From assembly GCA_002269645.1 (NCBI GenBank), contig NIVC01003327.1, positions 6,033 through 70,032 on the forward strand: 64,000 bases of DNA, in the 5' to 3' direction. Positions 17,401 through 64,000 of the stretch are shown here, one piece after another. Position 1 is the first letter of the stretch; each line of letters begins with the position of its first letter. The position numbers and the translations under genes are program-made. The notes under the pieces were generated by a model. It saw only the letters and a program-made list of their open reading frames with translations, was not told the origin of the DNA and ran no database searches. The DNA is from Macrostomum lignano (lineage: Eukaryota).

Positions 17401-20400
17401 AGAGAACAGAAAAAGTTGGGAATCCGTTATAGCCACAGCTCTAATGGGTAAGAATGTTGAAAACTTTATAATGTTTGATGGCGCTGGTGGAAATGGCAAG
17501 GGGGTTGAGGACAACCTACTTCTTAGAACTCTAGAATCTGATTATGCAGCACCACTGAGTCCTGATGTTTTGAATTCACCAATAAGAATAGACAGGCCAC
17601 AACCAGCCCTAGCACAAATTAATAAAAAGAGGTGGTTATCAGTCAAAAAGTAAGCGGTGTCTTGAACAATGCATTAATAAAATTACTAACTGGTGGTGGG
17701 GTTATCCAAGCTAGAAATTTACATTCAAGCCAGTGTAATGTCGTTTTACACGCAACTCTGATAGTCGAATGCAACAACAAGCCTGACTTCAGACAAAATA
17801 TTGGAGATGCAGAGAAGAGGAGAATTATCAATATTAATTACCCGTGCAAATATACAACAGATAACGAAATCATTAATTGATCCTGAGAAACACACTTACA
17901 AGGCCGATCCATATTTGAAAAGTGAGGAGTTTGCAGAGATGAAACACCTACTAGAAATTTTATAAAACCGAATGCTTCTGACATGAGAATGTATGACTCT
18001 GTTGAATTGACTTCATGAACTATTTGACCTCCAGCAACATTGAGATTATTAGTGCTACCTGGTGTTGGCGAAATCTTGATATAGTCTTCTTTCTTTTCGA
18101 AAAAACTAAAAGTTTTGTCCTCATATAGGTTCAGTATATACTTTTTGTTTTCAATTTTTGTACGAGAAATTTTAACTAAGCTTCGTGAGGTCTAAGAATT
18201 ATCCCATTACCCTGTTTCTCCTTTTCAACTTTAAACATCTTTAGCAGCCACTTGACTTCTTCGCTGGGTACTTGTTCGACTCTTTTAGCCGCATCAACTA
18301 ATACTCCGCTCCCTTGAGCCTTTTTCAACTCTTCTAGTTTTTTGTCGTTCAATGCTTTCTATTGTCTTATTATGCTTAGCATTGTTGGCTGTATTAACAT
18401 TTTTTGCAATCATTGTACCAACTCCGGAGGCTGCTCCGATACCACCCAAAATTGCTGGTAGCAAGCCCAATAGAGGAATTATTCCACCTTCATGTTCTTT
18501 CTGTTTGTCTTGCAATTCTCGAATCTTCTCTTTAGAAAGATACTGCTTTTGCTTATTTACAGTAACATACCTTGGTTTCCCCTCTCGAACATATCGATTG
18601 AGTCTGGCTTCAGTGTTTTTGTCGCTCATTTTTAAGGTCAGAATTTCTTCAAACCATTGCCTTGTCTCAAAGACACTTGAGACTGTTCTGCTGATCCTAG
18701 AGCCTTTTTAACAATGTCTTGAATGGCCTTGTTTGATTGAGAAGCTATCTGTTGCTCTTCTTCCATTCTTTTCTTTGCTTCTTTATCTCTACGTTTCTTT
18801 TTAATATATTCCAGTTCCTCACCTGCTTTAGACATGTCACTGTAGGTTTTCTTTGCGTCGAATATGTTTTTAGCTGCTGTTGCTGTTTTACCTATGGCAT
18901 CAGCTCCACTCACAATTTTACTTCCATGATTTGATAAAAAGTTTGTGACACCACTGATCATATCACCAATTCCTTCACCCTCTTTATCAACTAGTAGTTG
19001 TGAATCAGACGTTTCAATCTGACCTTTCGCCCGTTTGCAGTTTGTTCGATAGGCGCTCATTTTTAGTTGAAAAATTTGCTGGTAGAAGCTGGGATTTGTA
19101 AAATGATCCAATAATTTCTTCTCCATTCTCATCCTCAATAATGTAAGTTATGGGATTTGAGTACACAAATTTCTTAATCGTAAAAACCTCTGAAATTTTC
19201 CAATAACCCTTTCGACCCTTTTCAAAGTGCTCTTTGAATCTATAGATATGAACTTTGTCACCTACTTTAAAGTTTGGTTTCTCATTTGAAACCTCGAAGT
19301 AAGGCTTTGGTACTCGCTCAGGATGTTTAGATGCTTCTGAAGGAGTTATCAGAATCTCAGAATGGATTGTGTTGTACTTATCAACAATAGCTGGCAATAT
19401 GTGGAGCCACTTCTGGTTTCCTTGTAGATCAAATTCAAACCATAGTTTCTTTGTGAGAGTACGATTGAACCTCTCAATCATTGCATTCTTAGACTCGCCA
19501 TAAATTGAAAACATCTTGTTAATATACTCCCCGTTTTCATCTTTCTTTCTTATGTTGTCTTTTGAAAACGAGTATAGCTTGTACATATGCTAATTATAAA
19601 ACTCCTTGCCTTCATCTACACAAAGTCTCTCTGATCGTCTTCCTGATTCCTTAAATACTTTTTGGAAAGCTTCTGCAACTTCCGCTCCCGTCTTTGTTTT
19701 CAAAGGTACTGCCCAGGCGTCACGTGTAAAACCATCTATGATAGTGAGTGCATATTTGTAACCTCTTTTAGGAGGAAGGATTATTATGTCTGCATGCCAA
19801 ATTGTGTCTTTTGCATAGTGAATCATTTTTCTAAACAGTCTTGGTTTTCTGTATTCCCTATGCAGCTTCACAGCATCTTCATAGCTAAGACCCTTTCCAT
19901 AAATGGTTAGACAGTCTATACAATTGTTGGGGTTGTGAGTATGAATGCCTAATCCAAACCGAACTTTAGCCTTGATAATACGCTTTACTAGATTTCTAAT
20001 GAGTCTCTCTTTCACAGACAAGTCACTGGTTGGAATAGCATCTAAATCAGTTATCATTTTTTCATCAGCAATATGCTTCTTTGCTAGGGCTTCCTCTGGA
20101 GTTGAAGACGTTTTTTCAGCATCTCTATAGTTTTTGTCATGATAGTAAGCAGTCCAATCTATTGGTTTAATTGGTAGACTGTCATACCGAGGCCAGTCTG
20201 TAATTGGATTGAGTCTTTTGTCTAAATTTGTATCAGGCAGTTGTCCCTCAATCTTTCGAAAGAGGCTGGACTTTATCTTAAGGCTTCATCAGGATTAACC
20301 AGATCCTTCAGCCCCAACCCCATTAAGTCTCTGAACCTTCTCCATATCCTTGTCAACTGGGTCGGACGTACCTATGGTACTCGAACTTCTTTCGGACTTG

Positions 20401-22217: not shown

Positions 22218-23150
22218 GGGTTGCTTTCACAAACGCGAAATTTCACAACCGCTAAATCACCTACTTTCATAAACGCGAAACTTCACAACCGCGAAACTTC
22301 ACAACCGCTAAATCACCTACTTTCATAAGCGCTAAATTTCACAACCGCGAAACTTCACAACCGCTAACTTTTTTGCAGTCACTTTCATAAACGCGAAACT
22401 TCACAACCGCGAAACTTCACAACCGCTAAATCACCTACTTTCATAAGCGCTAAATTTCATAAACGCGAAACTTCACAACCGCTAATTTTTTTGCAGTCAC
22501 TTTCACAAACGCGAAACTTCACAACCGCTAAATGCCATCTACTTTCACAACCGCTAAATGTCATCTACTTTCACAACCGCTAAATGTCATCTACTTTCAC
22601 AACCGCTAAATGTCGTCTACTTTCACAACCGCTAAATGTCATCTACTTTCACAACCGCTAAATGTCGTCCACTTTCGCAACCGCTAAATGTCATCTACTT
22701 TCACAACCGCTAAATGTCATCTACTTTCACAACCGCTAAATGTCGTCTACTTTCACAACCGCTAAATGTCGTCTACTTTCACAACCGCTAAATGTCATCT
22801 ACTTTCACAACCGCTAAATGTCGTCTATTTTCACAACCGCTAAATGTCATCTACTTTCACAACCGCTAAATGTCGTCTATTTTCACAACCGCTAAATGTC
22901 ATCTACTTTCACAACCGCTAAATGTCGTCTACTTTCACAACCGCTAAATGTCGTCTACTTTCACAACCGCTAAATGTCATCTACTTTCACAACCGCTAAA
23001 TGTCGTCTATTTTCACAACCGCTAAATGTCATCTACTTTCACAACCGCTAAATGTCGTCTATTTTCACAACCGCTAAATGTCATCTACTTTCACAACTGC
23101 TAAATGTCGTCTGCGCGAAACTTTACAATCGCCAAATATGTCATCTACTT
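22218..23150 (+). repeat. Left foldback TIR: 26-bp tandem array (TTTCACAACCGCTAAATGTCATCTAC)
   Basis: Directly visible; inverted partner at 29615-30360. Confidence 0.95.
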
Positions 23151-24725
23151 TCTTATTATAGTAGAGTTCCATTGCCAATTGAGCACAGATACCGAGTGGT
23201 AGGTGTTACGTTCTGTAACAGTGACGTCAATAATTACTCTCAGTTAAGTTAAGGCAGATACTCGTACATTTTGCATATGTAATGAAGCTATTATACATTC
23301 GTCTTCTCGGTGGGGGCTTCATAAGACCAAAATTTCCTAATGTTTGAACTGTAAAGTACAGGGCAGTACTTAAGACACGGAAATTTAGGAATTATACAGA
23401 AATTATAGAGTAGTCTGAATATATTAATAATAAAACAGTATATAATTATACAGATTTAGGACTCGGAACTCGGAACAGAGGAGGGTTTTTTGACCGTGTC
23501 TTTAATGAAAGAACACTTGTTTCCCATTCGGGAAGAGAGCATACTCGTACTGTTTTATTTTCCTGGCCCTTGTGCCTTCCTCAATTCTCACCAGCCATAG
23601 CAGGTTCCGGCTCTACATTGATGGGGTAGCGGGGAAACGCGGGTACAAACTGCCAGAGTCTAGAGGTTGTATGACTCTGCGGACACATGTCTCACACTTT
23701 TTACGTTATACTGAAACGCAGTCACAACACATGAGACAGAAAATTTCACAACGTCATAATACTGTACTATCCTACTTAGCGTCTCAGTTTTTTTACTGTT
23801 TCTTTTTCTTCACTCACACGTGTTGGAAACAGAAAGAAAAAGACAAATTGTTTGCTGTAAGTTTTCACTGTACTCAATGATGTTGTAGTATCCATGCTCC
23901 ATGGTTTTCCACTTCGATTTCGACCTTTTGTATTATTCAACTTTGACAAACGGCAAGATAGCAACAACAAAACTGAAAAATGTGCAGGAAACTTGTGGGC
24001 ACTAAATTATACATTTAAATCCTGCTATATCTTTTAGAGGCTTTGCACCTTGAGTACACGGTTTATAGAACAAACGATGGAAAGCTTATGAACCGTAACT
24101 TGTTGTAACTTGAGAAAAAAGTGCGAATGCCACGTTCTTTAAAAAAGAAACCTAGATACTGCTATTTTAGAAGGATAAATGCTATAACAATGCGAACGAA
24201 CTCTAATTTTATTATAATATTTACTTTGATAATGGGACATTATTAGGCATTAGATAATAAGACTATGGGCCTAGTCTGAAGTACTTTTTCCTTGCGATTT
24301 TCTCTCGTATTGTTCATTATGATTATTCACATTGCTCACAGTTTTCTCTCTGGCCACTGGATTCCTATGCCCTATGGAATTTGTCAAGGTGCCACCCTCA
24401 TAAGTTTTGGCTAGCAATGCCGTCTCACAGGCCACTCTCACGAATTCTCCGTTTGTATCTTAACCAGATTTATGCACCGGGTACATGATAGCTGCTTATT
24501 GCTCGCAATAATATTTACGTTACTTCGAATCATATTTGTTGTTAATTCTTATTACTAACCTCTCCCCGTCCTTTTTAACTTCTACGCTGAGAGCCTATCG
24601 TCCTTTTCTGCACTTAATTCTTATTTTCAATCTGTTCAATCTGAATGCAGACTCTGCTTCCGCCATATATTCCTGTGGTCACGTCCTGCGGCCCTGTGGC
24701 CCTTTTCTATTACGAAACGTCATTG

Positions 24726-26870
24726 CTAGAAAAAAATAGGAATGAACATCACACAATCGCCTCGACACACAGGGCACTGCAGTAGTCTGATCTGAATATT
24801 CTCTGAACAGATGGTACAAACAACGTGACCACAGGGATATGTGGCGGAAGCAGAGTCTAAGTTTTCTAGACATACGGGGCATCGTCGTTCGCCGCCGCCA
24901 AGGCCCTGGTCGACGGTGTCATCTTGCGGCTGCCCACCAGCACCGCCAAGGGCCGGCTGGGCGATGACTTGCGGCTGCCCACCAGCGCCGCCAAGGGCCG
25001 GCTGGGCGACGTCTTGCGGCTGCCCACCAGCACCACCAAGGGCCGGCTGGGCGATGACTTGCGGCTGCCCACCAGCGCCGTCAAAGGCCGGCTGGGCAAC
25101 GTCGTCTTGTGGCTGCCCACCGGCGCCGCCAAGGGCCGGCTGGGCGATGACTTGCGGCTGCCCACCAGCGCCGTCAAGGGCCGGCTGGGCGACGTCGTCT
25201 TGTGGCTGCCCACCGGCGCCGCCAAGGGCCGGCTGGGCGACGTCTTGCGGCTGCTCACCAGCGCCGCCAAGGGCCGGCTGGGCGACGTCTTGCGGCTGCC
25301 CACCAGCACCGCCAAGGGCCGGCTGGGCGATGACTTGCGGCTGCCCACCAGCGCCGCCAAGGGCCGGCTGGGCGACGTCGTCTTGTGGCTGCCCACCGGC
25401 GCCGCCAAGGGCCGGCTGGGCGACGTCTGGCAACTGACCTACAGCCAGTTCAGCAGCATCATGTGGGTCGTCTAGAGGGAGACCAGCTGATGCACTCAAA
25501 TTGCGTAGAACCTCCAGAGGAGTTGCCCGTCCACTGCTTAACAGGTCATACTGCTGCCGAATGCGGATACTTTTTAGTACACTGCGCTTTCCTCGCGCTC
25601 GGCGGATTGGAACACCACGTTTTAGCCTATTTAGGTCAGCTGCATAGGTTGAACAAATGCTTCTTTTCGTTGAGGAATAAAGCGCTACAATGAAATCCCA
25701 CATATTGGGATGAGCGGTCTCTACAAAGGTCCTCCATTGACTATGGTAGGATTCCTGCTTACTATTGGTCCTGTCTTCGCAGTTGTGCACAGAGAGGATG
25801 GCTGCACCAACCCTCTCGAGCCAGTAGGTCCGGATGTACGTGTAGGCTCGATGCAGTGCTTCCATCTTGTCATTGGCAAGTGTTGTAACAAATGTCTCAG
25901 GTCGCAGGACAGCATGAAGTGCAGCAAGGTGTTGCGCAGGAAGCAGAGGCAAGCACAAAAGCAGTCTCACATAGCTTCGAACGTCAGTGTTGCGGCACAC
26001 TTCACTCCATAGTCCAAGCTTTTTTAGCTTCGTGAGGACAGCTTGCGTGTAGTGAAACCAACATCCATGAGCGGTTGATGTCGGAAATGCTTCCAGCAGC
26101 GAATCTCGCAGCGCAATTTCGTAATCCGTCATGACACTCAGTGGCTCGAAGGCAGGAAACAGCTGCTTTACCTTCGACCACACTAAATGGTAGAGGGCCT
26201 TTGTCTTGCCAGTAAGTAGCGCAAAAAAGCAAGGAAAAAAGAAACCTTGTTTAACGATTCCAATGGTCACTAATTGAAAAAACAGGCGAGGCACAACTCG
26301 GAATGTGCCATCAACGAAAATGTTGTTTGCATTTTGAAGCTCAGCCAGGAGTTCAGGGTGAGCAAAAAAAACAGCAGCATGCTGGTCAACTTGACTGCTT
26401 CCCTGGAAAACTTTCTTGCCATCTGCTCCGCAGTTTTGCAGATGCATGTCCACGTCATGCAGAAGTTCAACAGCCTCATCAACAGATGTTGGGATTCGAG
26501 GCTGTACAGCTCGTCTTGCTCGCCACATGCGGAGCTCCACTTCTGGAAATCCAACATCTGGCCCAGCTGCTTCATCATTTGTTATTTCGTCAAAAACTAC
26601 TCGTAGGCGCTTTTCTGGCTGTCTTGTCGCAGCTTCATTTAGTCGTCGCTTTAACTTCATCTTTCCAATTTCTTCATCAGGGATTGGACCATGGTTATGA
26701 ATCCCACTGTGTGTGGCAGTCTCACCACTCAGCATAACTTTGGCGAAGCAGTCTTCATTACGACATGTAAAATAGTGCTTCTCGTTCAATGTTCTTTTGC
26801 ACCTGTATGCATGCTGGTCTATTAGGAGAAGCCTTGAGCCCCTACGGCCTTCAACAAATTCAAATGGCAT
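24726..26870 (-). CDS. FLYWCH-MULE transposase with 15/16-aa repeat linker and C-terminal C3HC4 RING (714 aa, intact)
   Basis: FLYWCH-like N-terminus (G..LLLIDQHAY...YFTC...C.A...H.H). MULE motifs FVDGTF, VMTDYE, CWFHY and RTNSKQESYH. Eleven PQ(D/V)..AQPALGGAGGQ units precede the RING CPVC...PCGH..C..C...CPVCRG. Confidence 0.93.
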   Translation of the reverse strand: MPFEFVEGRRGSRLLLIDQHAYRCKRTLNEKHYFTCRNEDCFAKVMLSGETATHSGIHNHGPIPDEEIGKMKLKRRLNEAATRQPEKRLRVVFDEITNDEAAGPDVGFPEVELRMWRARRAVQPRIPTSVDEAVELLHDVDMHLQNCGADGKKVFQGSSQVDQHAAVFFAHPELLAELQNANNIFVDGTFRVVPRLFFQLVTIGIVKQGFFFPCFFALLTGKTKALYHLVWSKVKQLFPAFEPLSVMTDYEIALRDSLLEAFPTSTAHGCWFHYTQAVLTKLKKLGLWSEVCRNTDVRSYVRLLLCLPLLPAQHLAALHAVLRPETFVTTLANDKMEALHRAYTYIRTYWLERVGAAILSVHNCEDRTNSKQESYHSQWRTFVETAHPNMWDFIVALYSSTKRSICSTYAADLNRLKRGVPIRRARGKRSVLKSIRIRQQYDLLSSGRATPLEVLRNLSASAGLPLDDPHDAAELAVGQLPDVAQPALGGAGGQPQDDVAQPALGGAGGQPQVIAQPALGGAGGQPQDVAQPALGGAGEQPQDVAQPALGGAGGQPQDDVAQPALDGAGGQPQVIAQPALGGAGGQPQDDVAQPAFDGAGGQPQVIAQPALGGAGGQPQDVAQPALGGAGGQPQVIAQPALGGAGGQPQDDTVDQGLGGGERRCPVCLENLDSASATYPCGHVVCTICSENIQIRLLQCPVCRGDCVMFIPIFF

Positions 26871-27856
26871 TTGTGGTATCGTTTATTTGATGAAGATAGC
26901 GTACTGAAAGAGGAAAATTTTGAAAGGTAATATCCATTTGATTACATTGTTCATAAAAATACAACTAAGTGTATGTACAACCACTTAAAATATGATCCTA
27001 TTACACTTCCAAATATTCTAAATCTATTACTATTTGTAGATAGAAATCTAAACTATAGCATATGGGCAACTCTGCTAAAAAATTATTGTATTGCTAAGTT
27101 GGCAAGACAATCCCAGTTTTGTCTTTTTTGACATCACTTCTATATTTTTGGTACTAAATGTAAAAGTGAAAATCCTCCATTGAAGAAGAATAGGGATAGA
27201 ACTCCCATTGCCAGAATTCCATTCCCTGAAATTCATCAGCTCAATAATCCCATGACCAGAATTCATCTTTCAAATCCTCTCCAAATCCACAATGAAACCT
27301 TTGAAATATCATATCTTGTTTTCCCTGTTTGGAAAAATTGGCTGTCATTGTCTCCAGACCAAGACTCTCCTTTCTCCCCTCTCTTCTTTGCTCTTTCATC
27401 TCTAATCTCTCATCTCTGCACTCTCTTTTTTATTATATTCTAGCTCTTATTTTTCGTCTCTACTCTCTTATTTCTCCTCTTTACTTTTCAATGTAAGCAT
27501 ATTGGCAAGTCACGGTCACGGGACCCTCACTGAAGTCCCTACTTAAGTATACCATACGGCATAGGTCATAAAATTGTGAGTCAGAAATCATCTATTAAAA
27601 TTTCTATAAGATTCTAGTCGAATCAGAGTATAATGCCATAAGCTATACAGTTTTAGTTAGCTTAGTAGCGAGTTATAGAAAAAAATCATTTTATAATATA
27701 GCTGTTTTGTAGAAAACTAAGTAGCTAAAAATAAAATTTAATATTAACTTGGAGACTAAGAAGCCATGGGCCTGTATAATAAAAAGAGGACCATAAATAA
27801 AAGGTACAAAATTCTATTATTATTAATACATACATGTATATAAAGCTGAGCTGAAC

Positions 27857-27889
27857 CATGGACTTCTATACTTAGTATAGAAGTCCATG
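27857..27889. mobile_element. 33-bp perfect-hairpin mini-element (P-like ends)
   Basis: CATGGACTTCTATAC-TTA-GTATAGAAGTCCATG flanked by the 7-bp direct repeat GCTGAAC (27850-27856 and 27890-27896). Confidence 0.7.
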
Positions 27890-27940
27890 GCTGAACCAAT
27901 AGGCAGCTCTGCTCTAAAAACGCAGATATCATGGTTTAGC

Positions 27941-29422
27941 CATAGAACTCTAGATAATATGGAAGCGAAGGCTTTTTTGGACCTTTACATAACCGGGCCG
28001 ACTTGAAAGTAACGTGAGCATAGGATTTCCATTGAATCTTATTCCTGATTCTTGATTATTTTAAAAATCTATCAGGTTTCCTTACAGTACAGATTACAAA
28101 TGCTGGTTCGGACGGTACACTTGAGCCTCCTCGGTCAATCTGTAAACGTTGAAGAGCGAAAGCCTTTGAAGCTGGCTTCAAAGTTGACTTGCAGCATGAT
28201 TGATCAAAAAAGCGTTTAAAAAATCAAAATCAAGGCAAGCAGTGGAATGAGACAGCAATTTTGTTCGATCCATTGTTCCACCCTGGCATGTTCATAACGT
28301 GAGGACGAGCACAATCGATAGGCACAGGAAAGATTGCAGCCGAGATCAAGTCAGATCAGATATGGACTGGCAGCTATGCCATCTTACTGATGTAGAAAAA
28401 AACTACGTGCGCGACTGGAAAATCTGTAAAAGCAGTTCAGTGGAGTTGCGCCTCAGGATATTCAGTACCTACCTTGCAGTGGAATCATCAAGCAGCACCC
28501 GAGGCATAGATGAAGAAGTCAAGGAATTCGTTCGCGAACTGGAGGCAGTGGGTGAATTGTGAGATGCTGATGACATCGTCACTTTCTATGTCGCAGGCAA
28601 GTTTGCCAAGTCGATTTCAATGCAAAAAAAACTGTCGAGCGAGCCTGTGCCGAACTGCTGGTTGCTGTTGAAGATAAAGGAGGCGTTAACGAAGCCCCTT
28701 CTACGTTCCTGTGAAAGATTAATCGAGGAAGCTTGACGGTACCGTCTGGACCAGAGCTTGCAATCTGTAAGGAGCCTGGCAGATTTTGAAGCTCTTGTGT
28801 GACTGAAACCTGCTATGATAAAAACAGAGCTGCTCTTTTCTCTGGCAACTCCTGTAAGTTTTCTTATATCTTACCAACACAACAAAGACTTGCGTATATA
28901 CGAGCTAGCTCGTAACTGTACAGTTTATTTCTCTTACCCGCATCCCCTCCTGCCCCGCCATGGTCCCGCGTTTCTTTTTGCAGAGGGTAGCGAGTAGCTA
29001 TACAGTTAACTGTTTATAGAAAGGGTTTTTTTTGAATCCCCAAGCACATTATACAGCCATCACCCGTTCTTTGTCAGTTTAACTTGACGTGAGAATGACT
29101 GAAACTACACACCAAGTTTTCTTATTGCACTCAAATGGCAGTTATCACTATCTTTACAATATTCCCATAACCTAACCCTAAACCCTAAAAAGTTGTTTCG
29201 GACCCATGTACAACGGCTCAGTGCTCATATTCTAGTATCCACATTTCATTGGCCCTCAGCCCCTCACTCAATACCCCTTTTATGGAATGGGAAGCAACGG
29301 CCCAGTTTTGTCAAAGCCAAAGGGAATAAGAAAAAACAGTCGGCCAGCTCAGGGCCCGGTTATTTAAAAATTTTCAAACCCTTGTTAAAAGACTTCACTT
29401 CCATATTATCTATAATTCTATG
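27941..29422 (+). mobile_element. Non-autonomous P-superfamily-like DNA transposon nested in the MULE
   Basis: ~30-bp TIRs CATAGAA(CTC/TTA)TAGATAATATGGAAG and TSD GTTTAGC (27934-27940 and 29423-29429). Confidence 0.85.
28300..28800 (+). pseudogene. Degenerate P/THAP9-like transposase C-terminal fragment
   Basis: Across frameshifts and stops it reads FYVAGKFAK...C..CAELL...STFL*KINRGSLTVPS, similar to the Y(I/V)AG...CxxC...RGGL..PS motif of P-type transposases. Confidence 0.5.
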
Positions 29423-29614
29423 GTTTAGCTTAGCACATCAGTTGTGGCTTGTAATGTAAGTAGGTAGCTTTTTCAAAACGTCCTTTAAAAAATTATAACC
29501 GCAGTCTATGGGCTGTGCGCCGCGTTGTACAGCCTGCAGTGTCGTGTAGTTTTTTCAATACGATTTGTGTTAAAAATAATTTCATAAACCGCAGAAACCT
29601 GCAAAAATGATAAC

Positions 29615-30360
29615 TTGAAGGACATTTGGCCGTTGTAAAGTTTCGCAGTTGTGAAAGTAGATGACATTTAGCGGTTGTGAAAATAGACGACATTTAGCGG
29701 TTGTGAAAGTAGACGACATTTAGCGGTTGTGAAAGTAGATGACATTTAGCGGTTGTGAAAGTAGATGACATTTAGCGGTTGTGAAAGTAGATAACATTTA
29801 GCGGTTGTGAAAGTAGATGACATTTAGCGGTTGTGAAAGTAGACGACATTTAGCGGTTGTGAAAGTAGACGACATTTAGCGGTTGTGAAAGTAGATGACA
29901 TTTAGCGGTTGTGAAAGTAGACGACATTTAGCGGTTGTGAAAGTAGATAACATTTAGCGGTTGTGAAAGTAGATGACATTTAGCGGTTGTGAAAGTAGAT
30001 GACATTTAGCGGTTGTGAAAGTAGATGACATTTAGCGGTTGTGAAAGTAGATGACATTTAGCGGTTGTGAAAGTAGATAACATTTAGCGGTTGTGAAAGT
30101 AGACGACATTTAGCGGTTGTGAAAGTTAGATAACATTTAGCGCGTTGTGAAAGTAGACGACATTTAGCGGTTGTGAAGTTTCGCGGTTGTGAAATTTAGC
30201 GCTTATGAAAGTAGGTGATTTAGCGGTTGTGAAGTTTCGCGGTTGTGAAGTTTCGCGTTTATGAAAGTGACTGCAAAAAAGTTAGCGGTTGTGAAGTTTC
30301 GCGTTTATGAAAGCAAGTGCTTTTAGCGGTTATGAAATTTCGCGTTTGTGAAACCCACCC
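29615..30360 (-). repeat. Right foldback TIR: inverted 26-bp tandem array
   Basis: (GTAGATGACATTTAGCGGTTGTGAAA)n, directly visible. Confidence 0.95.
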
Positions 30361-32494: not shown

Positions 32495-35400
32495 TCATCT
32501 CAGAGCGGGCAGCAGGTAGTTGCAGGCGAGGCGCACCCAGCCGGGCATGCCGTCGCCGCTGCGGCAGCCGATGCGGTTCAAAGTGACGGCGAATGACGGC
32601 GCGCCCAGCCAGAGGGCGCGGATCGGCGCCAGCAGCGCGTGCGACACGGCGTGCGGCAGGCAGTCGATGTAGCAGGAGGCGAGAACGCCGTCAATAGCGA
32701 TGCAGCCGGTCAGGGTGAACGGAGCCAGCAGGCCTTGGCGAGTGACGCCTCGCTGAACTTCGACCACCGTCTCGAGCCGCGGCTGTCGTCCAGCTTCGTC
32801 CAGCAGTTGCACGGCGAGTCCCGGCCGGATGTCGCGCGCAGGCACGGCGGACAGACGGGTCGCCCGACCGTCGGGCTGAGCCGAGGTGAACAGCAGATGG
32901 CCGGAGCTGAGCGTCAGCTGGGCGCTCGTGGTCGACACCGTCACAAAGTCGGACGACCAAGCAGTCTCGTCACGGTGGCCCCACATGAAGACGGGCGAAA
33001 AGGCGGGCCGGCCGTCCTGCAGGCTGAGTACTGGCTGCCCCGCAGAGAGCTCGGAGAGGCGGACCCGGCCGTGCGGAGTCATCACCGTCGCGTCCAAGGG
33101 GAAGCACTTTCCTCTGCTGAGAACGGTAAGTTCAAGTTTTTTTAATTTATCACATTTTCCTGCGACAGACTACTTTTCAGTAGCAATATTGATGTAAAGA
33201 GTGCGCCTGTCGTGTTAATTGTGGCCAGCAAAAACCCCTCCGCGGAGGAAACCTTCCTATGGGGAAACTTCCTGCGAGGTTACTTCCTGCGAGGTTACTT
33301 CCTGCGAGGTTACTTCCTGCGGGGTAATTTCCTGCGGGGAAACCATTTGCGATTTACTTCCTGGGAGGAAACTTCCTGCGAGGTTACTTCCTGCGAGGAA
33401 ACTTCCTGCGAGGTTACTTCCTGGGAGGAAACTTCCTGCGAGGTTACTTCCTGGGAGGAAACTTCCTGCGAGGTTACTTCCTGCGAGGTTACTTCCTGCA
33501 GGGAAACTTTCTGCGGGGAAACTTCCTGCGGGGAAACTTCCTGCGGGGAAACTTCCTGCGGGGAAACTTGTTAGTGGCTCGCACTGACATATCGGTATAA
33601 GACATACATGTATTAAAGGAAACAATAAGAAATCTCCATCGATTTACTCTATCATTACCGACCCAATCTGAGCAGCCATTTCGTTAGCAACTCTGTCCAT
33701 CTCTGTACTCATTGCCGCATCGCGTCTCGTTCGAAACTCTTCTCGAACTCGATCGCGCTCTCGCTCCTGCAAGTTGCGCAACCGCTCGTCCTCTTGCCGA
33801 TTCAACTCCTTCGTGGCTTTCTGCAGCTCCAATTGCGCAAATACGAAATATTCGTTGGTGTAAGTCGCTCGGAAACTGGAAGACTCAGCTTCGGAATTGA
33901 TTCTAGCCAAGTGATCGACACTGCACACCAGGTTGTAGACTTGCTCGGCCTGCGTTGCTGCACTGCGATTGCGGCTGTTGTCCAGCATGGTGATTCTGTT
34001 ACCGCATCTCGTTATTAAGGAATCCAGCGCGCTGAGCTGTCGACGAGCGTTCTGCACCTCCTGGTAGAAGCGCAAGTCGCTGTTATCGAACGCATCGCCG
34101 TGTGTGTATGCGATAATTGCGTACCTGTGAATAGAAATCGATTAAGACACTTTTCAAAGACCGATAGGGGGTGTAACAGGACGTAAAACTTGAAGTTGTT
34201 TCACGAGAACAATGCACAAGGCTGGCAGTGTTTCCATGGACTCGAAGACATCTCACCAAGCTGGTAGTGTTCCCCTGGACTCGGAGACATGTCACCAAGC
34301 TGGTAGTGTTCCCCTGGACTCGGAGACGTGTCACCAAGCTGGTAGTGTTCCATTGGACACGGAGACATCTCACCAAGCTGGTAGTGTTCCCCTGGACTCG
34401 GAAACATCTCACTAAGCTGGTAGTGTTCCCCTGGACTCGGAGACATCTCACCAAGCTGGTAGTGTTCCCCTGGACTCGGAGACATGTCACTAAGCTGGTA
34501 GTGTTCCCCTGAACTCGGAGACGTGTCACCAAGCTGGTAGTGTTCCATTGGACACGGAGACATCTCACCAAGCTGGTAGTGTTCCCCTGGACTCGGAGAC
34601 GTGTCACCAAGCTGGTAGTGTTCCATTGGACACGGAGACATCTCACCAAGCTGGTAGTGTTCCCCTGGACTCGGAGACGTGTCACCAAGCTGGTAGTGTT
34701 CCATTGGACACGGAGACATCTCACCAAGCTGGTAGTGTTCCCCTGGACTCGGAAACATCTCACTAAGCTGGTAGTGTTTCCCTGGACTCGGAGACATCTC
34801 ACCAAGCTGGTAGTGTTCCCCTGGACTCGGAGACATGTCACTAAGCTGGTAGTGTTCCTCTGGACTCGGAGACATGTCACCAAGCTTTTAATGTTCCCCT
34901 GGACTCAGAAAAATCTCATCAAGCTGGTAGTGTTCCCCTCGACTCGGAAACATCTCACTAAGCTGGTAGTGTTCCCCTGGACTCGGAGACATGTCACCAA
35001 GATTTTAATGTTCCCCTGGACTCGGAAACATCTCACTAAGCTGGTAGTGTTCCCCTGGACTCGGAAACATCTCACTAAGCTGGTAGTGTTCCCCTGGACT
35101 CGGAAACATCTCACTAAGCTGGTAGTGTTCCCCTGGACTCGGAAACATCTCACTAAGCTGGTAGTGTTCCCCTGGACTCGGAAACATCTCACTAAGCTGG
35201 TAGTGTTTCACTGGACTCAGAAACATCTCTCGCACTGCCTATCCTCGGCGTGAAAATTTGGATGTGTTACATTTCCGCTTTAGCCCAACTCTGTGACATT
35301 CGTGTGTAAAATTTGACTAAGCCCACAACAGTTGGCACTGGCTCACAATGACTCACTTATAGAACATCTCTCCAAACAGCTCCTCAAGCTTCTCCACAGC

Positions 35401-35739
35401 TTTCCGCTCTTCGTCAGTGAACTTCACGTCCAACCGCAGTGTGATCACAAATGCGTGAACTCCGCCTTCGGCAAACATAGCGATGGCGTGACAGATTTGT
35501 CTGAGGGCAGCTTCCGGGTTGCTGGTGTCCATTGTGCCGGGAGTGTCGACCACGGTTAGGTACCGACCCCTCACTAGTCTGGTCTCCTTTTTGCAGACGC
35601 TTGTTTGCGAGACCAGACTGCCCGGCTCGCTGGTTAGGAACGGTCCGGGCGTGCCTAGCAACGCGTTGCCAAGGGAACTTTTGCCGCTGCCGCTTTTACC
35701 TAGGAGCATCATCCTCAGCTCGCCGCCGGGTGGGAAGTT
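32495..35739 (-). CDS. AIG1/GIMAP GTPase - coiled coil - hedgehog-type Hint/Hog fusion protein (>=3 exons, ~488 aa)
   Basis: Exons 35739-35357, 34124-33663 and 33116-32495 are phase-consistent, although the middle donor GG|GTCGGT is weak. GTPase motifs: GKSGSGKS, DTPG, KFTDEE, THGD. Hint motifs: K|CFPLDATV, LTLSSGHLL, GLLAPFTLTGCIAIDGVLASCY. An SRR-like tail reads HAVSHALLAPIRALW. A 5' exon may be missing. Confidence 0.85.
33240..33570. repeat. 15-bp minisatellite (GAGGAAACTTCCTGC / GAGGTTACTTCCTGC), intronic
   Basis: Directly visible. Confidence 0.9.
34210..35225. repeat. 39-bp minisatellite (AAGCTGGTAGTGTTCCCCTGGACTCGGAGACATCTCACC), intronic
   Basis: Directly visible; the 13-aa periodicity of the overlapping ORFs confirms the unit length. 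Confidence 0.95.
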
Positions 35740-37104
35740 CTGCGTGTTTTTTAGGGAGAAAAGTAAGATCTGTATTGATTGTTTAACCTGTTAGAATGTA
35801 AGACGTGTATTGATTGTTTCACCTGTTGTAATATAAGCACTGTTTTCACTGAAAATCAGTGCCTTTATAATAATTCCAAAAGTTACCTGAGATCCTGCGT
35901 CCATTGCTTGCGAGCCTTTTTTGAGCCAGAAACCAAAAAACGGCAGTTAAAGCTGGAGGACTTTAGTCCCTGTCTCACAGTTTATACCTGTAGAGCACCT
36001 ACTGCTAAACTGTAAATGAAAAGAGTACAACAATAAGGTACTTCTTGAGCACAGAAGAGCCATTCGTCTATTGATGCTACTTTCAATACAAGAGCTCAGA
36101 ATTTTTTGAGCACAAAATCTAACCCTGTCCCATTGTCTCATTCTTTCTTTCTGCCCAGAGGTGTACGGGGGTCCTGGGTTGCCTTTTCTTCAGAGATAAC
36201 TACAATGTTGCTGGTGTCTTGGATGGCAATTAGGGCTAACTTGAAGAATTCAAGCATTGCATGCACATTGTTAGTTAGGTCTTGGAAAAAATAATGCGCA
36301 GCAGGGTCTCTGCGGGTATTCTGGGCCTCAGGTCATCTGGGCCTCAGGTCCTCTGGGCCTCAGGTCCTCTGGGCCTCAGTTCGCAGCTTTGAGCGGCATT
36401 ATACTCAAGCAGAAAATGGTTAACACCAAGCCGTCATCAAATATTCGATACTCGTATATCAACGGAATCTTTGTGTCTGCATGCAGTTTTGCAGTTTCCA
36501 AAAAGTGTGACACTTCTCTCCGCGGTTTGCGAACCCCTGCAATAAAATTCATTCCTCAATTCCATTGAGCACTTGCCGAACGGAGGCACTGCGAGTAGTT
36601 CGGGATGATGATAAAGGATGACTGCAGGCTGCAAGAGCATATCCCCAATAACCCCCCCCCATACCTGTTTAATCCGAGGCGATAAAACTTTATTGCGGAA
36701 TTGCTATTGACTGCGTCACGCACACTGGCCCCAGATTCCTGCCACCGACAGGCAGCGCAGGAGGCTGGCAAACAACAATTTTTCGGGATTAAGGATCTCC
36801 ATCAGTAGCGGTCTAGGCGGTCCCCTACACAGTTAGTTGTCTGGTCCGTGCCGTGTTTTTTTATTTTTCATTTCGAAGTATCGGCAGAATAATTATCAAG
36901 TTTGCATGCCGGGGCCGATTGCGTGTCGCTATGGCGAATTCTGTTGAACTGTACACGGCGACTGCAGACAGAGTGGCATCGAGACAGGAAGAGCAGATCA
37001 CGGACGTTGACAAGGGGAGGGGTTGGATCTTTAATTCTTTAATTGATTGTTTTCTAGCTTTGCTGTTTATGACATTTTTTTCATCTGCTCTCATTCTGTT
37101 GGCC

Positions 37105-38760
37105 TGATCTTCTATCCCACTCTTCTTCTACCCACTCTCCCTCTACCCACTCTCCCTCTACCCACTCTCCCTCTACCCACTCTCCCTCTACCCACTCTCC
37201 CTCTACCCACTCTCTCTCTACCCACTCTCCCTCTACCCACTCTCCCTCTACCCACTCTCCCTCTACCCACTCTCCCTCTACCCACTCTCCCTCTACCCAC
37301 TCTCCCTCTACCAACTCTCCCTCTACCCACTCTCCCTCTACCCACTCTCCCTCTACCCACTCTCCCTCTACCCACTCTCCCTCTACCCACTCTCCCTCTA
37401 CCCACTCTCCCTCTACCCACTCTCCCTCTACCCACTCTCGATCTACCCACTCTCCCTCTACCCACTCTCCCTCTACCCACTCTCCCTCTACCCACTCTCC
37501 CTCTACCCACTCTCTCTCTACCCACTCTCCCTCTACCCACTCTCCCTCTACCCACTCTCCCTCTACCCACTCTCTCTCTACCCACTCTCCCTCTACCCAC
37601 TCTCCCTCTACCCACTCTCCCTCTACCCACTCTCCCTCTACCCACTCTCGATCTACCCACTCTCCCTCTACCCACTCTCCCTCTACCCACTCTCCCTCTA
37701 CCCACTCTCCCTCTACCCACTCTCCCTCTACCCACTCTCCCTCTACCCACTCTCCCTCTACCCACTCTCCCTCTACCCACTCTCCCTCTACCCACTCTCG
37801 ATCTACTCACTCTCCCTCTACCCACTCTCCCTCTACCCACTCTCCCTCTACCCACTCTCTCTCTACCCACTCTCCCTCTACCCACTCTCCCTCTACCCAC
37901 TCTCCCTCTACCCACTCTCCCTCTACCCACTCTCCCTCTACCCACTCTCCCTCTACCCACTCTCCCTCTACCCACTCTCCCTCTACCCACTCTCGATCTA
38001 CCCACTCTCCCTCTACCCACTCTCCCTCTACCCACTCTCCCTCTACCCACTCTCTCTCTACCCACTCTCCCTCTACCCACTCTCCCTCTACCCACTCTCC
38101 CTCTACCCACTCTCCCTCTACCCACTCTCCCTCTCCCCACTCTCCCTCCACCCACTCTTCCTCTACCCACTCTTCCTCTACCCACTCTCCCTCCACCTAC
38201 TCTCCCTCTACCCACTCTCCCTCTACCCACTCTCCCTCTACCCACTCTTCCTCTACCCACTCTCCCTCTACCCACTCTCCCTCTACCCACTCTTCCTCTA
38301 CCCACTCTTCCTCTACCCACTCTTCCTCTACCCACTCTCCCTCTACCCACTCTCCCTCTACCCACTCTCCCTCTACCCACTCTCCCTCTACCCACTCTCC
38401 CTCTCCCCACTCTCCCTCCACCCACTCTTCCTCTACCCACTCTTCCTCTACCCACTCTCCCTCCACCTACTCTCCCTCTACCCACTCTCCCTCTACCCAC
38501 TCTCCCTCTACCCACTCTTCCTCTACCCACTCTCCCTCTACCCACTCTCCCTCTACCCACTCTCCCTCTACCCACTCTTCCTCTACCCACTCTTTCTCTA
38601 CCCACTCTCCCTCTACCCACTCTTCCTCTACCCACTCTCCCTCTACCCACTCTCCCTCTACCCACTCTCCTCTACCCACTCTTCCTCTACCCACTCTCCT
38701 CTACCCACTCTCCCTCTACCCACTCTCCCTCTACCCACTCTCTCTCTACCCTACACTCCC
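37105..38760. repeat. 15-bp pyrimidine-rich minisatellite (CTCTACCCACTCTCC)n
   Basis: Directly visible; produces the spurious LPTLP and GRVGR ORFs. Confidence 0.97.
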
Positions 38761-39149
38761 TCTATATCCACTGTATCTCTCCTTCACTCCTCTCATTCGC
38801 GTCAAAATTATCTAATTAAAAGGAAGATTTGAGTTCATTTCCTAAAAAAATATTTAGCAGTTGGTGAAAGCATCAAAATGTCACGACTCGCTGCTGCACC
38901 AGCCGGCACACTCGCTGTCACATTCGCTTCTTTGCCTCCTCTACCCACCCGCCTATACTCAATGAGTAGTTATTTAACTTGGAAAAGATCCCTGTTGAAA
39001 TTTGTCATTAGTGCAAGCTTTTCAATAAAAAAATGATAAATTATTTTACTCAAACAAAATTGTCTCAACAAAATAATGCTCGTACGTACATAACAACTGT
39101 GGTTTATTAGAAATATCATTGACATTGCAGTAGTACGAGTCACAGTTGG

Positions 39150-49417: not shown

Positions 49418-51116
49418 TCAAGCCAATCCAGAAGTCTGCCGCTTCTTCTGCAGCAGCTCCGGCTCGGTGGACATCCAAGCCTGCAGCATCTTGATGTCGA
49501 GCAGCATAAGCCGCAGCGCCATAGTCCAACGTTCGTCCTTATTTCCAGCCCGAACAATTGCGAATCTCTGGCCGGAGTCTTCAATCTCTTTAGGCGGGTG
49601 CAGCGGATATGGCGCCAGCCGGTCTTTGCCGTAGCGATCGCGAACGAAGGCCAGCAGCTCAGTGACGCAGCTGAGGTAGGCGGACATGCCCGAGTCGAAT
49701 GCCGAGTCTGAGAACAAGCGGCCGTGGCTCGAATAGAGCGGCAGCGATCTGAGGGGAGTGCGATTGAGGGCTAGGATTAGGGGCAGGTGATCCCCAAGGC
49801 TTCGAGTGAGCATGATTGATGGGGGAAAGCTCGAATCTTCTCAAGCTCGAATCTTCCCAAGCTCGAATCTTCTCAAGCTCATATCTTCCCATGCTCGAAT
49901 CTTTAGAAGCTCTAATCTTTAGAAGCTCGAATCTTCTCAAGCTCGAATCTTCTCAAGCTCGAATATTATTAAGCTCGAATTTTTTAAAGCTCGAATCTTC
50001 TCAAGCTCGAATCTTCCCAAGCTCGAATCTTCTCAAGTCATATCTTCCCAAGCTAGAATCTTCTCAAGTCATATCTTCCCAAGCTCGAATCTTCTCAAGC
50101 TCATATCTTCCCAAGCTCGAATCTTCTCAAGTTCGAACCTTCCCAAGCTCGAATCTTCCCAAGCTCGAATCTTCCCAAGCTCGAATCTTCTCAAGTTCGA
50201 ACCTTCCCAAGCTCGAATCTTCCCAAGCTAGAATCTTCCCAAGCTAGAATCTTCCCAAGCTCGAATCTTCTCAAGCTCATATCTTCCCAAGCTCGAATCT
50301 TCTCAAGCTCGAATCTTCTCAAGTTCGAACCTTCCCAAGCTCGAATCTTGAAATGGTTCAAACTAATTCTTCAGGATGATGTAAAATTTCCAGCTTGTCA
50401 AAGTAACCCTATGAACGATTAGAAAGTCAGAGCCGCTGTATACATGAAAAAAGTTTTAATTTGCATACAACACTACTGAACTGAATTTCCTGAGTAGAAA
50501 AATACGGACATGATGAAGTAAAACGCAAAAAATAAGTAAAACATTTTGAATTTCTGCACCTTCCCGTAGCTAAGAGTCGCATCTCGGACTGGCTGGCGCA
50601 GGGCACAACGGTGTACACAGTTGAGGCGAAGCCCAGCCTGTGGGACACGGCCTGCAGCAGCAGGGCGCACTGGCCCCAGCCGGCATTCAGCTCGGCCCAG
50701 TCGATCTGTCCACCCGCCGGCCGGCCCATTCGGAAGCCGCCAATGCTGGCAATGTGAGCGTCGTACCAGATGTGAAACGCCGCCCCGAGTACGCTGGTGT
50801 TCTGCAGCCTGTTCAGCTCCGACTCTGCGTAGGCCTGAGCCATGCATAGAGAGAAGGGGTGGGGTTGCTCAACCGCGAATTCAACCCTTTGAACCCTAGC
50901 ATTCAAAGTTTACTACGATACATATCGGTGATGGAACAAAGTCCCGCTATAGACAGACAGACAGAAAGAAAGACAGACAGACAGACAGACAGACCGACAG
51001 ACACACAGACAGACAGACAGAGAGACAGACAGAGAGACAGACAGACAGACAGACAGAGACAGACAGACAGACAGAGACAGACAGACAGACACACAGACAG
51101 ACAGACAGACAGACAC

Positions 51117-51191
<75 letters not shown>

Positions 51192-51258
51192 CACAGACAG
51201 ACAGACACACAGACAGAAAGACAGACAGACACACAGACAGACAGACAGACAGACAGAC

Positions 51259-51291
<33 letters not shown>

Positions 51292-51344
51292 CACAGGCAG
51301 ACAGACACACAGACAGACAGACACACAGGCAGACAGACAGACAC

Positions 51345-51377
<33 letters not shown>

Positions 51378-63300: not shown

Positions 63301-63905
63301 TGGCACTCTGATATTCAAAATGGAACTGGTATTCAAATGGCACTCTGGAATTCAAAATGGCACTCTGATATTCAAAATGGAACTGGTATTCAAAATAGCA
63401 CTCTGATTTTCAAAATGGAACTGGTATTCAAAATGGCACTCTGATATTCAAAGTGGCACTCTGATATTCAAAATCGCACTTGATATTCAAAATCGCACTT
63501 GATATTCAAAATGGCACTCTGATATTCAAGATGACACTCTGATATTCAAAATGGCACTCTGATATTCAAAATGGCACTCTGATATTCAAAATGGCACTCT
63601 GATATTCAAAATGGCACTCTGATATTCAAAATGGCACTCTGATATTCAAAATGGCACTCTGATATTCAAAATGGCACTCTGATATTCAAAATGGCACTCT
63701 GATATTCAAAATGGCACTCTGATATTCAAAATGGCACTATGGTATTCAAATGTCACTATGTATTCAAAATCGCACTTTGATATTCAAAATCGCACTTTGA
63801 TATTCAAAATGGCACTCTGATATTCAAAAATGGCACTTTGATATTCAAAATGGCACTTTAATATTTAAAATGGCACTCTGATATTCAAAAATGGCACTTT
63901 GATAT
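57385..63905. repeat. 6.5-kb satellite of 20-bp (AAAATGGCACTCTGATATTC) and 18-bp (AAAATGGAACTGGTATTC) units with recurrent variants
   Basis: Directly visible; variants GGAATTCGAAATGG and AAAATAGCAC recur in ordered blocks. Confidence 0.98.
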
Positions 63906-64000
63906 TCAAGTGCGCACAGTTTTAGAATTCAAAAATTCACTGAACAAGATATTAAAAAATGGTGCCCAGAAAGTATGAAAACAAAATGGCATTAAATATC

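What the first reader, a model, noticed from the sequence alone, without database searches (positions are those of the whole stretch)
32495..35739. GIMAP/AIG1 immune GTPase fused to a self-processing hedgehog Hog domain
Seen: three exons join an AIG1 GTPase, a coiled coil and a full Hint domain with the nucleophile Cys (RGK|CFP), a His in SSGH and an SRR-like amphipathic tail. The hedgehog cholesterol-activating Asp (Drosophila FMDRN) appears to be His here (WGHRD), the TxxH Thr is Ser, and the -1 residue is Lys rather than Gly. Established: Hog domains autocleave and attach cholesterol; an IAN-GTPase/Hint fusion (GmGIN1) is known from the mycorrhizal fungus Glomus mosseae. Inference: a cytosolic GTPase that autoprocesses and may lipidate itself with a sterol or another nucleophile for membrane targeting. 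It may have come by horizontal transfer or convergent fusion.
Basis: partly seen in the sequence, partly recalled or inferred. Interest (0 to 1): 0.75.

Follow-up and report, generated by a model that had tools for sequence, protein, structure and literature searches.

The report
Flatworm GIMAP GTPase fused to Hog domain
This is a real, already annotated gene of the flatworm Macrostomum lignano that joins an immune-type GTPase to a hedgehog-style self-cleaving domain; this domain combination is already reported from corals, snails, lancelets and a fungus, and its chemistry has not been tested in any paper I could search.

Summary
On the minus strand, four coding exons (35904-35887, 35739-35357, 34124-33648, 33116-32495) encode a 499-aa protein. 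It has an AIG1/GIMAP GTPase (Pfam E 1.3e-36), the GIMAP helical extension and a full hedgehog-type Hog domain (Hint E 6.4e-31, with an SRR-like tail).

The protein is identical to GenBank PAA88525.1 (Macrostomum lignano Mlig029920), whose annotation was built from RNA-seq transcripts. A paralog encodes the GTPase, helices and Hog domain in one uninterrupted exon, so the fusion is not a splicing artefact.

None of them is unusual. His at the D303 position occurs in 135 of the 150 closest Hog relatives, Asp in only 12. Ser/Thr alternate, and the -1 residue varies freely.

Thirty-one of those 150 relatives also carry AIG1 (abalone, snails, a mussel, a brachiopod, lancelets). The literature already reports AIG1+Hint in Glomus, Acropora, Biomphalaria and amphioxus. 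Recent horizontal transfer is not supported.

Most likely mechanism, inferred only: a thioester forms at Lys296-Cys297, and the roughly 33-kDa GTPase is then released with a C-terminal lipid (probably sterol) anchor. Verdict: a new member of a known kind, of modest interest.

The parts
35887..35904 (-). Coding exon 1: Met1-Gln6, donor CAG|GTAAC
   Evidence: An in-frame TAA lies 15 codons upstream. The model is identical to the public one, P0001/PAA88525.1.
35357..35739 (-). Coding exon 2: the N-terminal half of the AIG1 GTPase. It holds the P-loop GKSGSGKS (35700-35677), DTPG (35547-35536) and the GIMAP conserved box. Lys112 (35424-35422) sits at the GIMAP7 Arg-finger position.
34125..35356 (-). 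Intron 2 (GTGAGT..CAG, phase 2). It is mostly a 39-bp minisatellite, about 26 copies at 34221-35229.
   Evidence: Copy number differs between gene copies g1 and g3.
33648..34124 (-). Coding exon 3: the second half of AIG1 (G4 motif THGD at 34105-34094) and the GIMAP helical extension. It has two alternative in-frame donors, at 33663|33662 and 33648|33647.
33117..33647 (-). Intron 3 (GTAAAT..CAG, phase 2), with a 15/30-bp minisatellite at 33245-33569. If the intron is retained, the protein stops at once (..SVMIE*, TAA at 33646-33644).
32495..33116 (-). Coding exon 4: the complete Hog domain plus the stop codon. Key residues are the scissile bond Lys296|Cys297 (Cys at 33106-33104), His340 (32977-32975, at the D303 position), Ser363-x-x-His366 (32908-32897) and Cys441 of SCY (32674-32672, at the C400 position). 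The SRR-like tail carries HxLLAPxR (32641-32618) and GMPGW (32551-32537). TGA is at 32497-32495.

Best explanation
The locus is the g3 copy of Macrostomum lignano gene Mlig029920. It encodes a 499-aa protein without a signal peptide, so it is probably cytosolic. The protein has an AIG1/GIMAP GTPase with its helical extension (aa 1-293), followed directly by a hedgehog-type Hog autoprocessing domain (Hint fold plus short SRR-like tail, aa 297-499). It belongs to an old, patchily retained animal family of AIG1-Hog proteins, whose fungal counterpart is GmGIN1.

Proposed mechanism, inferred from the hedgehog paradigm:
1. Cys297, helped by Ser363/His366, attacks the Lys296 carbonyl and forms a thioester.
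2. His340, the natural equivalent of the Drosophila D303H 'general base swap', activates a hydroxyl nucleophile held by the SRR-like helices. A membrane sterol is the most likely nucleophile.
3. The roughly 33-kDa GTPase fragment is released with a C-terminal ester-linked lipid.
4. That lipid fixes the GTPase on a cytosolic membrane face. It would do the job that hydrophobic C-terminal anchors do for other GIMAP/AIG proteins.

Shown here: gene structure, domain identity, fold, conservation of catalytic residues, family distribution. Inferred: that cleavage happens, what the nucleophile is, and the membrane-anchoring role.
For: **Gene and fusion are real.**
- My four-exon model equals GenBank PAA88525.1 residue for residue.
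- That annotation comes from a genome-guided RNA-seq transcriptome (PMC5730564).
- Paralog Mlig016153 encodes aa 14-509 (AIG1, helices and Hog) in one open exon.

**Domains and fold.**
- Pfam finds AIG1 and Hint well above their cut-offs.
- The AlphaFold model has mean pLDDT 89.6.
- Foldseek matches GIMAP7 (TM 0.84-0.86) and Drosophila HhC 1at0/6tyy (TM 0.90, rmsd 1.7-1.9 A).

**Catalytic set.**
- Cys297, His340, Ser363, His366 and Cys441 align with C258, D303, T326, H329 and C400.
- Across the 31 AIG1-Hog proteins, His366 is invariant, and Cys297, His340, Cys441, His452, Pro457 and Arg459 are at least 90% conserved.
- Drosophila D303H keeps cholesterolysis and accepts a wider range of sterols (PMC9163320).

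**Tail and localisation.**
- The tail aligns with both SRR helices of true hedgehogs.
- There is no signal peptide. The only hydrophobic peak lies in Hint beta-strands.
- Some Biomphalaria AIG proteins have predicted transmembrane domains, read by the authors as a sign of membrane association (PMC7053062).
Against: - No biochemical data exist for any animal AIG1-Hog protein in the literature I could search.
- Hedgehog cholesterolysis occurs in the secretory pathway, whereas this protein is probably cytosolic.
- The hedgehog 'HWY' motif of the second SRR helix, whose His is reported to contact cholesterol, is 'PGW' here and 'GxPxW' across the family. Sterol specificity is therefore uncertain.
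- The -1 residue is Lys rather than Gly, which may slow the acyl shift.
- The GIMAP7 arginine-finger position is Lys here.
- Transcript support is indirect. It rests on how the public annotation was made; I did not inspect reads.
Confidence: 0.6

Rival explanations
1. The Hog domain works as a plain autoprotease. The thioester is resolved by water or a small thiol, and an unlipidated GTPase fragment is released, for example as a regulated activation or release step in a stress or immune pathway.
For: The catalytic residues for thioester formation are conserved. The second SRR helix differs from hedgehog, PGW instead of HWY. D303A hedgehog still cleaves with DTT (PMC9163320), so cleavage and lipidation can be separated.
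Against: The general-base position (His340) and both SRR-like helices, including HxLLxPxR, are conserved across the family. Simple hydrolysis would not need them.
Confidence: 0.22
2. The Hog domain no longer cleaves. It serves as a permanent C-terminal module for membrane or sterol binding or for oligomerisation of the full-length GTPase.
For: The -1 residue is Lys, not Gly, and no experiment has been done. The amphipathic tail could bind membranes on its own.
Against: The nucleophile Cys, S/TxxH, His340 and SCY are kept over the long divergence between flatworm, molluscs, brachiopod and lancelets. That is hard to explain without catalysis. The -1 residue varies across the whole family, as it does in inteins.
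Confidence: 0.1
3. The fusion is an annotation or assembly artefact, two neighbouring genes joined by a false intron, or a recent horizontal acquisition of a fungal GIN1-like gene.
For: The Hint exon has higher G+C (0.69, GC3 0.83) than the AIG1 exons (0.52-0.56). The introns are full of minisatellites.
Against: - The paralog has all domains in one exon and shows the same G+C step (0.56 to 0.68) inside that exon.
- Three gene copies share the structure.
- The public model is transcript-based.
- Thirty-one AIG1-Hog proteins from several animal phyla cluster with it.
- The gene has spliceosomal introns in a typical repeat-rich flatworm context.
Confidence: 0.03

Closest known systems
Animal AIG1/GIMAP-Hint fusion proteins (Acropora millepora, Biomphalaria glabrata, Branchiostoma; database examples from Haliotis, Physella, Bulinus, Potamilus, Lingula)
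   Same: The order is the same: AIG1 GTPase, helical region, C-terminal Hog domain. There is no signal peptide. These proteins have His at the D303 position, an S/TxxH motif, an SCY motif and the GxPxW tail motif (PMC3723955, PMC7053062, PMC12373286).
   Different: The flatworm protein is the minimal form: one AIG1 domain, no CARD, death or kinase domains, and no long coiled-coil insert. It has Lys at the Arg-finger position. I found no flatworm member described in a paper.
GmGIN1 of the mycorrhizal fungus Glomus mosseae (Requena et al. 2002, as discussed in PMC2362128)
   Same: An AIG1/IAN-like GTPase sits N-terminal to a bona fide Hog domain, with no signal peptide.
   Different: It is fungal. 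I had no GmGIN1 sequence to align here. Four intronless AIG1-Hog proteins from unnamed metagenome eukaryotes form a separate Hog cluster, so the link between the fungal and animal fusions is open.
Hedgehog C-terminal autoprocessing domain (Drosophila HhC 1at0; D303H mutant 6tyy; human SHH)
   Same: The Hint fold matches (TM 0.90, 33% identity). Also shared are the Cys nucleophile, the T/SxxH motif, the SCY cysteine and a two-helix SRR-like tail with AHxxxxPxR.
   Different: There is no Hedge signalling domain and no secretion signal. The general base is His, not Asp. The -1 residue is Lys, not Gly. The HWY motif is replaced by PGW, and the tail is shorter.
Vertebrate GIMAPs (GIMAP7 3zjc, GIMAP2, GIMAP5)
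   Same: The G domain, conserved box and folded-back helical extension match (TM 0.76-0.86, E 5e-24).
   Different: Vertebrate GIMAPs end in hydrophobic anchors or nothing, never in a Hog domain.

Membership tests
AIG1/GIMAP (IAN) GTPases | AIG1 Pfam domain above the gathering score | tested here: met
   PF04548, 126.4 bits against a cut-off of 27, aa 15-214
AIG1/GIMAP (IAN) GTPases | G1 P-loop, G3 DxxG and G4 motif, plus the conserved box between G3 and G4 | tested here: met
   GKSGSGKS (20-27), DTPG (71-74), THGD (141-144) and GGVHAFVITLRL align with GIMAP7
AIG1/GIMAP (IAN) GTPases | GIMAP fold with C-terminal helical extension | tested here: met
   Foldseek against 3zjc: TM 0.84-0.86 over about 280 columns. 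Helices at 189-213, 225-250 and 254-293.
AIG1/GIMAP (IAN) GTPases | GTP binding and hydrolysis | not testable with these tools
   The motifs are intact, but the GIMAP7 Arg-finger position is Lys112. A biochemical assay is needed.
Hog (Hint + SRR/ARR) autoprocessing domains | Hint fold | tested here: met
   PF01079, 108 bits against 29.7. Foldseek against 1at0/6tyy: TM 0.90, rmsd 1.7-1.9 A.
Hog (Hint + SRR/ARR) autoprocessing domains | Cys nucleophile as first residue, and the T/SxxH motif | tested here: met
   Cys297 aligns with C258, Ser363 with T326 and His366 with H329. Ser occurs in 21 of the 31 family members.
Hog (Hint + SRR/ARR) autoprocessing domains | Titratable general base at the D303 position (Asp or His) and the SCY cysteine (C400) | tested here: met
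   His340 and Cys441. D303H is active in Drosophila HhC. C400 is named with D303 as a hedgehog Hint residue that inteins lack (PMC9163320).
Hog (Hint + SRR/ARR) autoprocessing domains | C-terminal sterol/adduct recognition region | tested here: inconclusive
   Helix 1 (SHALLAPIR) aligns with hedgehog AHxxFxPxR. Helix 2 aligns, but with GMPGW in place of G[IV]HWY.
Hog (Hint + SRR/ARR) autoprocessing domains | Autocleavage at the X-Cys bond with transfer to a nucleophile | not testable with these tools
   Needs recombinant protein, a Cys297Ala control and mass spectrometry
True Hedgehog proteins | N-terminal Hedge signalling domain, signal peptide, Gly-Cys scissile bond, Asp303 | tested here: not met
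   The N-terminus is an AIG1 GTPase with no signal peptide. The scissile bond is Lys-Cys, and His sits at the 303 position. This is a Hog protein, not a Hedgehog.
AIG1-Hog fusion family (GmGIN1-like / animal GIMAP-Hint) | AIG1 and Hog in one polypeptide, in that order | tested here: met
   Spliced model, transcript-based public CDS and single-exon paralog. Thirty-one of 31 compared members carry both Pfam domains.

The most novel reading that the evidence does not exclude
AIG1-Hog proteins could be a cytosolic self-lipidating switch. On this reading the Hog domain, with its native His general base and a tail unlike hedgehog's, couples the GTPase to a membrane by esterifying it to a lipid other than host cholesterol, for instance a dietary, symbiont or pathogen sterol. 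Cleavage would then work as a lipid-sensing step in innate defence. The two alternative donors, 15 nt apart, would tune the five residues just before the scissile bond.
Probability: 0.12. Interest if true: 0.75.

Novelty: new member of a known kind. Interest (0 to 1): 0.3.

Why it matters
Hedgehog is the only protein family for which covalent sterol attachment is well established, and that reaction takes place in the secretory pathway. A conserved family of probably cytosolic GTPases with an intact Hog domain suggests that autocatalytic lipidation may be used more widely, here as a way to anchor immune-type GTPases to membranes.

The flatworm gene adds a compact member in a species where transgenesis is established, so it is a practical test case for what non-hedgehog Hog domains attach. 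As a genome-scan finding it is a correct reading of a known architecture. It is not a discovery.

Tried and rejected
- Two homologous-protein searches, with the full protein and with the Hint exon, timed out. A third, with the AIG1 exon, gave one uninformative hit.
- **A wrong first reading of mine.** It is in frame (GG|GTCGGT donor) and is used in the public g2 model.
- **Foreign origin from G+C.** I considered this for the G+C-rich Hint exon and rejected it. The paralog shows the same composition step inside a single exon.
- **dN/dS between gene copies.** Not informative. Copies g1 and g3 differ by one synonymous site in exon 4, and g2 is a low-quality contig with many indels and a frameshift.
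- **Other copies in the window.** There is no second AIG1 or Hint copy.
- **Literature gaps.** No paper mentions Mlig029920 or Mlig016153. The Zhao et al. 2019 paper itself was not held, so D303H is cited through the review PMC9163320.
Full report
**1. What is in the sequence.**
The minus strand between 35904 and 32495 carries a gene with four coding exons and canonical GT..AG introns:

| Exon | Coordinates | Splice signals |
|---|---|---|
| 1 | 35904-35887 | ATG .. CAG\|GTAAC |
| 2 | 35739-35357 | .. TATAA\|GTGAGT |
| 3 | 34124-33648 | cacAG\|GTACGC .. ATAGA\|GTAAAT |
| 4 | 33116-32495 | ctcAG\|CAGAGG .. TGA |

The spliced CDS is 1500 nt and encodes 499 aa. An in-frame TAA lies 15 codons upstream of the ATG.

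Introns 2 and 3 are largely minisatellites: a 39-bp unit in about 26 copies at 34221-35229, and a 15/30-bp unit at 33245-33569. No other AIG1 or Hint copy lies in the window.

**2. Domain identity.**
- Pfam gives AIG1 at aa 15-214 (E 1.3e-36) and Hint PF01079 at aa 289-461 (E 6.4e-31). Both are far above their gathering scores.
- The best solved relatives by sequence are human GIMAP7, 4, 2, 1 and 5 for the N-terminal part, and Sonic and Drosophila hedgehog C-domains for the C-terminal part.
- An AlphaFold model built on a 31-sequence family alignment is confident (mean pLDDT 89.6, pTM 0.70).
- Foldseek superposes the N-terminal 280-290 residues on GIMAP7 (TM 0.84-0.86). It superposes residues from 297 on Drosophila HhC 1at0 and its D46H mutant 6tyy (TM 0.90, rmsd 1.7-1.9 A, 33% identity).
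- The 'coiled coil' is thus the helical extension that GIMAPs already have. The last helix (254-293) ends three residues before the scissile bond.

**3. Whose gene it is.**
- A search of 1.8 billion cluster representatives with the Hint exon returned a 499-aa protein identical to my model. It is GenBank PAA88525.1, BOX15_Mlig029920g1, of the free-living flatworm Macrostomum lignano.
- The gene region of the window is 100% identical to contig NIVC01003327.1, which is copy g3. Copy g1 differs by one synonymous site in exon 4 and by minisatellite copy number.
- The GenBank annotation of this assembly was derived from a genome-guided RNA-seq transcriptome (StringTie/TACO plus de novo transcripts, ORFs by TransDecoder) (PMC5730564). 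The exon junctions therefore have indirect transcript support.
- The partial g2 model joins ..AAQIG to RGKC. Models g1 and g3 join ..SVMID to RGKC at 33648/33116. The genomic sequence at the site is the same in g2. Two in-frame 5' splice sites 15 nt apart are thus annotated. They change five residues just upstream of the cleavage site.

**4. The fusion is genuine.**
- A paralog, Mlig016153 (509 aa, 41% identical), has the same small first exon. Residues 14-509, meaning the GTPase, helices and Hog domain, then lie in one uninterrupted exon. No splicing decision is needed to join the domains there.
- The higher G+C of the Hog exon (0.69 against 0.52-0.56) recurs inside that single exon (0.68 against 0.56). 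It is a property of the domain, not a sign of foreign DNA.

**5. The catalytic residues, and how unusual they are.**
HMMER alignments to Drosophila Hh give these correspondences:

| Drosophila Hh | This protein |
|---|---|
| C258 | Cys297 |
| D303 | His340 |
| T326 | Ser363 |
| H329 | His366 |
| C400 (SCY motif) | Cys441 |

- Among the 150 closest Hog relatives, the D303 column is His in 135 and Asp in only 12. Eight of those 12 group with Drosophila Hh in the tree.
- Across those 150 relatives, the T326 column is Ser in 75 and Thr in 73.
- The -1 residue is Gly in only 27 of 150, and in 3 of the 31 AIG1-linked proteins.
- His at this position is a working general base. The Drosophila D303H variant keeps its structure and cholesterolysis activity and accepts more sterols (PMC9163320). 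Its crystal structure 6tyy scores better against this protein than the wild type does (42.8 against 38.6 bits).
- In the 31-member family alignment His366 is invariant. Cys297, His340, Cys441, His452, Pro457 and Arg459 are at least 90% conserved.
- The C-terminal 55 residues form helices that align with both helices of the hedgehog sterol-recognition region. The first motif is kept: SHALLAPIR against AHxxFxPxR. The second reads GMPGW where hedgehogs have G[IV]HWY. A review reports that the His of HWY contacts cholesterol in simulations. The adduct specificity is therefore open.

**6. Distribution and origin.**
- Thirty-one of the 150 closest Hog representatives also carry an AIG1 domain. The named ones come from Haliotis, Physella, Bulinus, Bradybaena, Potamilus, Lingula and Branchiostoma.
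- The literature already reports AIG1+Hint proteins in Glomus mosseae (PMC2362128), Acropora millepora (PMC3723955), Biomphalaria glabrata (PMC7053062) and amphioxus (PMC12373286). The amphioxus paper describes its recurrent N-terminal CARD and C-terminal HINT architectures as unique to amphioxus among animals. The present data and the coral and snail papers show that AIG1+Hint itself is wider than that.
- In a neighbour-joining tree of Hog domains, 27 of the 31 AIG1-linked domains, including both flatworm paralogs, fall in one region of the tree. They are interspersed with short or unnamed sequences that show no AIG1 match. Four from unnamed metagenome eukaryotes form a second group.
- Pairwise distances of the AIG1 and Hog domains across 23 fusion proteins are correlated (r = 0.66, Mantel p <= 2e-4). 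That is what co-inheritance as one unit predicts, although shared species history alone would also contribute.
- An old fusion with patchy retention fits better than recent transfer or a flatworm-specific convergent fusion. Whether the fungal and animal fusions share one origin was not resolved.

**7. Mechanism.**
- Shown here: an intact GTPase, an intact Hog fold, a conserved catalytic set, and no signal peptide or transmembrane segment. The only Kyte-Doolittle peak, 1.65, lies in Hint beta-strands.
- Inferred from the hedgehog paradigm (PMC9163320):
  - an N-to-S acyl shift at Lys296-Cys297;
  - attack on the thioester by a hydroxyl nucleophile activated by His340 and positioned by the SRR-like helices;
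  - release of a roughly 33-kDa GTPase fragment carrying a C-terminal lipid ester, which would anchor it on a cytosolic membrane face.
- That role would match the membrane association suggested for other AIG/GIMAP proteins. Some snail members have predicted transmembrane domains.
- I give about 0.7 that the domain self-cleaves and about 0.35-0.4 that the adduct is a sterol.
- Rivals are hydrolytic release without lipidation, and a non-cleaving binding module. An annotation artefact or recent transfer is essentially excluded.

**8. Verdict.**
The architecture and the plausibility of autoprocessing stand. The claimed peculiarities and the transfer/convergence idea do not.
- The gene is already in GenBank and UniProt, and the architecture has been published several times. 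No paper I could search names this flatworm gene or tests any animal AIG1-Hog protein biochemically.
- It is a new member of a known kind, of modest interest.

Noticed in passing
window 22226-30312: A 714-aa ORF with FLYWCH, MULE transposase and RING domains (24726-26870, minus strand) is flanked by two roughly 600-bp arrays of a 26-bp tandem repeat (22518-23112 and 29641-30177). The repeat units are reverse complements of each other. This looks like an intact Mutator-like element of about 8 kb whose terminal inverted repeats are built from tandem repeats.
   Followed up: partly
window 16082-20057: ORFs with Prim-Pol and PriCT-2 primase domains lie on the plus strand (16082-16853). An rve integrase ORF lies on the minus strand (19590-20057). 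This is probably a remnant of a large DNA element, Maverick/Polinton-like or virus-derived.
   Followed up: partly
window 33117-33647 and 34125-35356: Both internal introns of the AIG1-Hog gene consist mostly of minisatellites, and their copy number differs between gene copies. The paralog Mlig016153 has no intron at either position. These may be gained or expanded introns.
   Followed up: partly
window 33648-33663: Two in-frame alternative 5' splice sites lie 15 nt apart. They give ..AAQIG|RGKC or ..AAQIGSVMID|RGKC, and so change the residues just before the predicted self-cleavage site. Both are used in public transcript-based models of different gene copies.
   Followed up: partly
window 35422-35424: The position aligned with the catalytic arginine finger of human GIMAP7 ('LGRYT') is Lys112 ('DVKFT') here, while the AIG1-Hog family consensus is Arg. 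That this GIMAP7 Arg is the arginine finger is from my own knowledge, not from a tool result. This may affect dimer-stimulated GTP hydrolysis.
   Followed up: no
window 50427-51806: A Beclin/Atg6 gene fragment is present (APG6 BARA domain, E 2e-22). An (AGAC)n array at 50951-51458 runs through the upstream reading frame. A TTAGGG-containing 12-mer array lies next to it at 51897-52548.
   Followed up: no
window 8701-11094; 37111-38764; 57388-63909: A 797-aa ORF with a reverse transcriptase domain, probably a non-LTR retrotransposon (8701-11094, minus strand). A 15-bp repeat in 110 copies (37111-38764). A 6.5-kb satellite of a 20-bp unit at the window end (57388-63909). Together they show how repeat-rich this flatworm contig is.
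   Followed up: no
L005 (NIVC01003326.1), gene copy g2: Copy g2 lies at a contig end. It has many small indels relative to g3 (39 gaps in 2.7 kb) and a 1-nt deletion in the Hint exon that truncates the public model. This is an assembly error or a decaying copy.
   Followed up: partly
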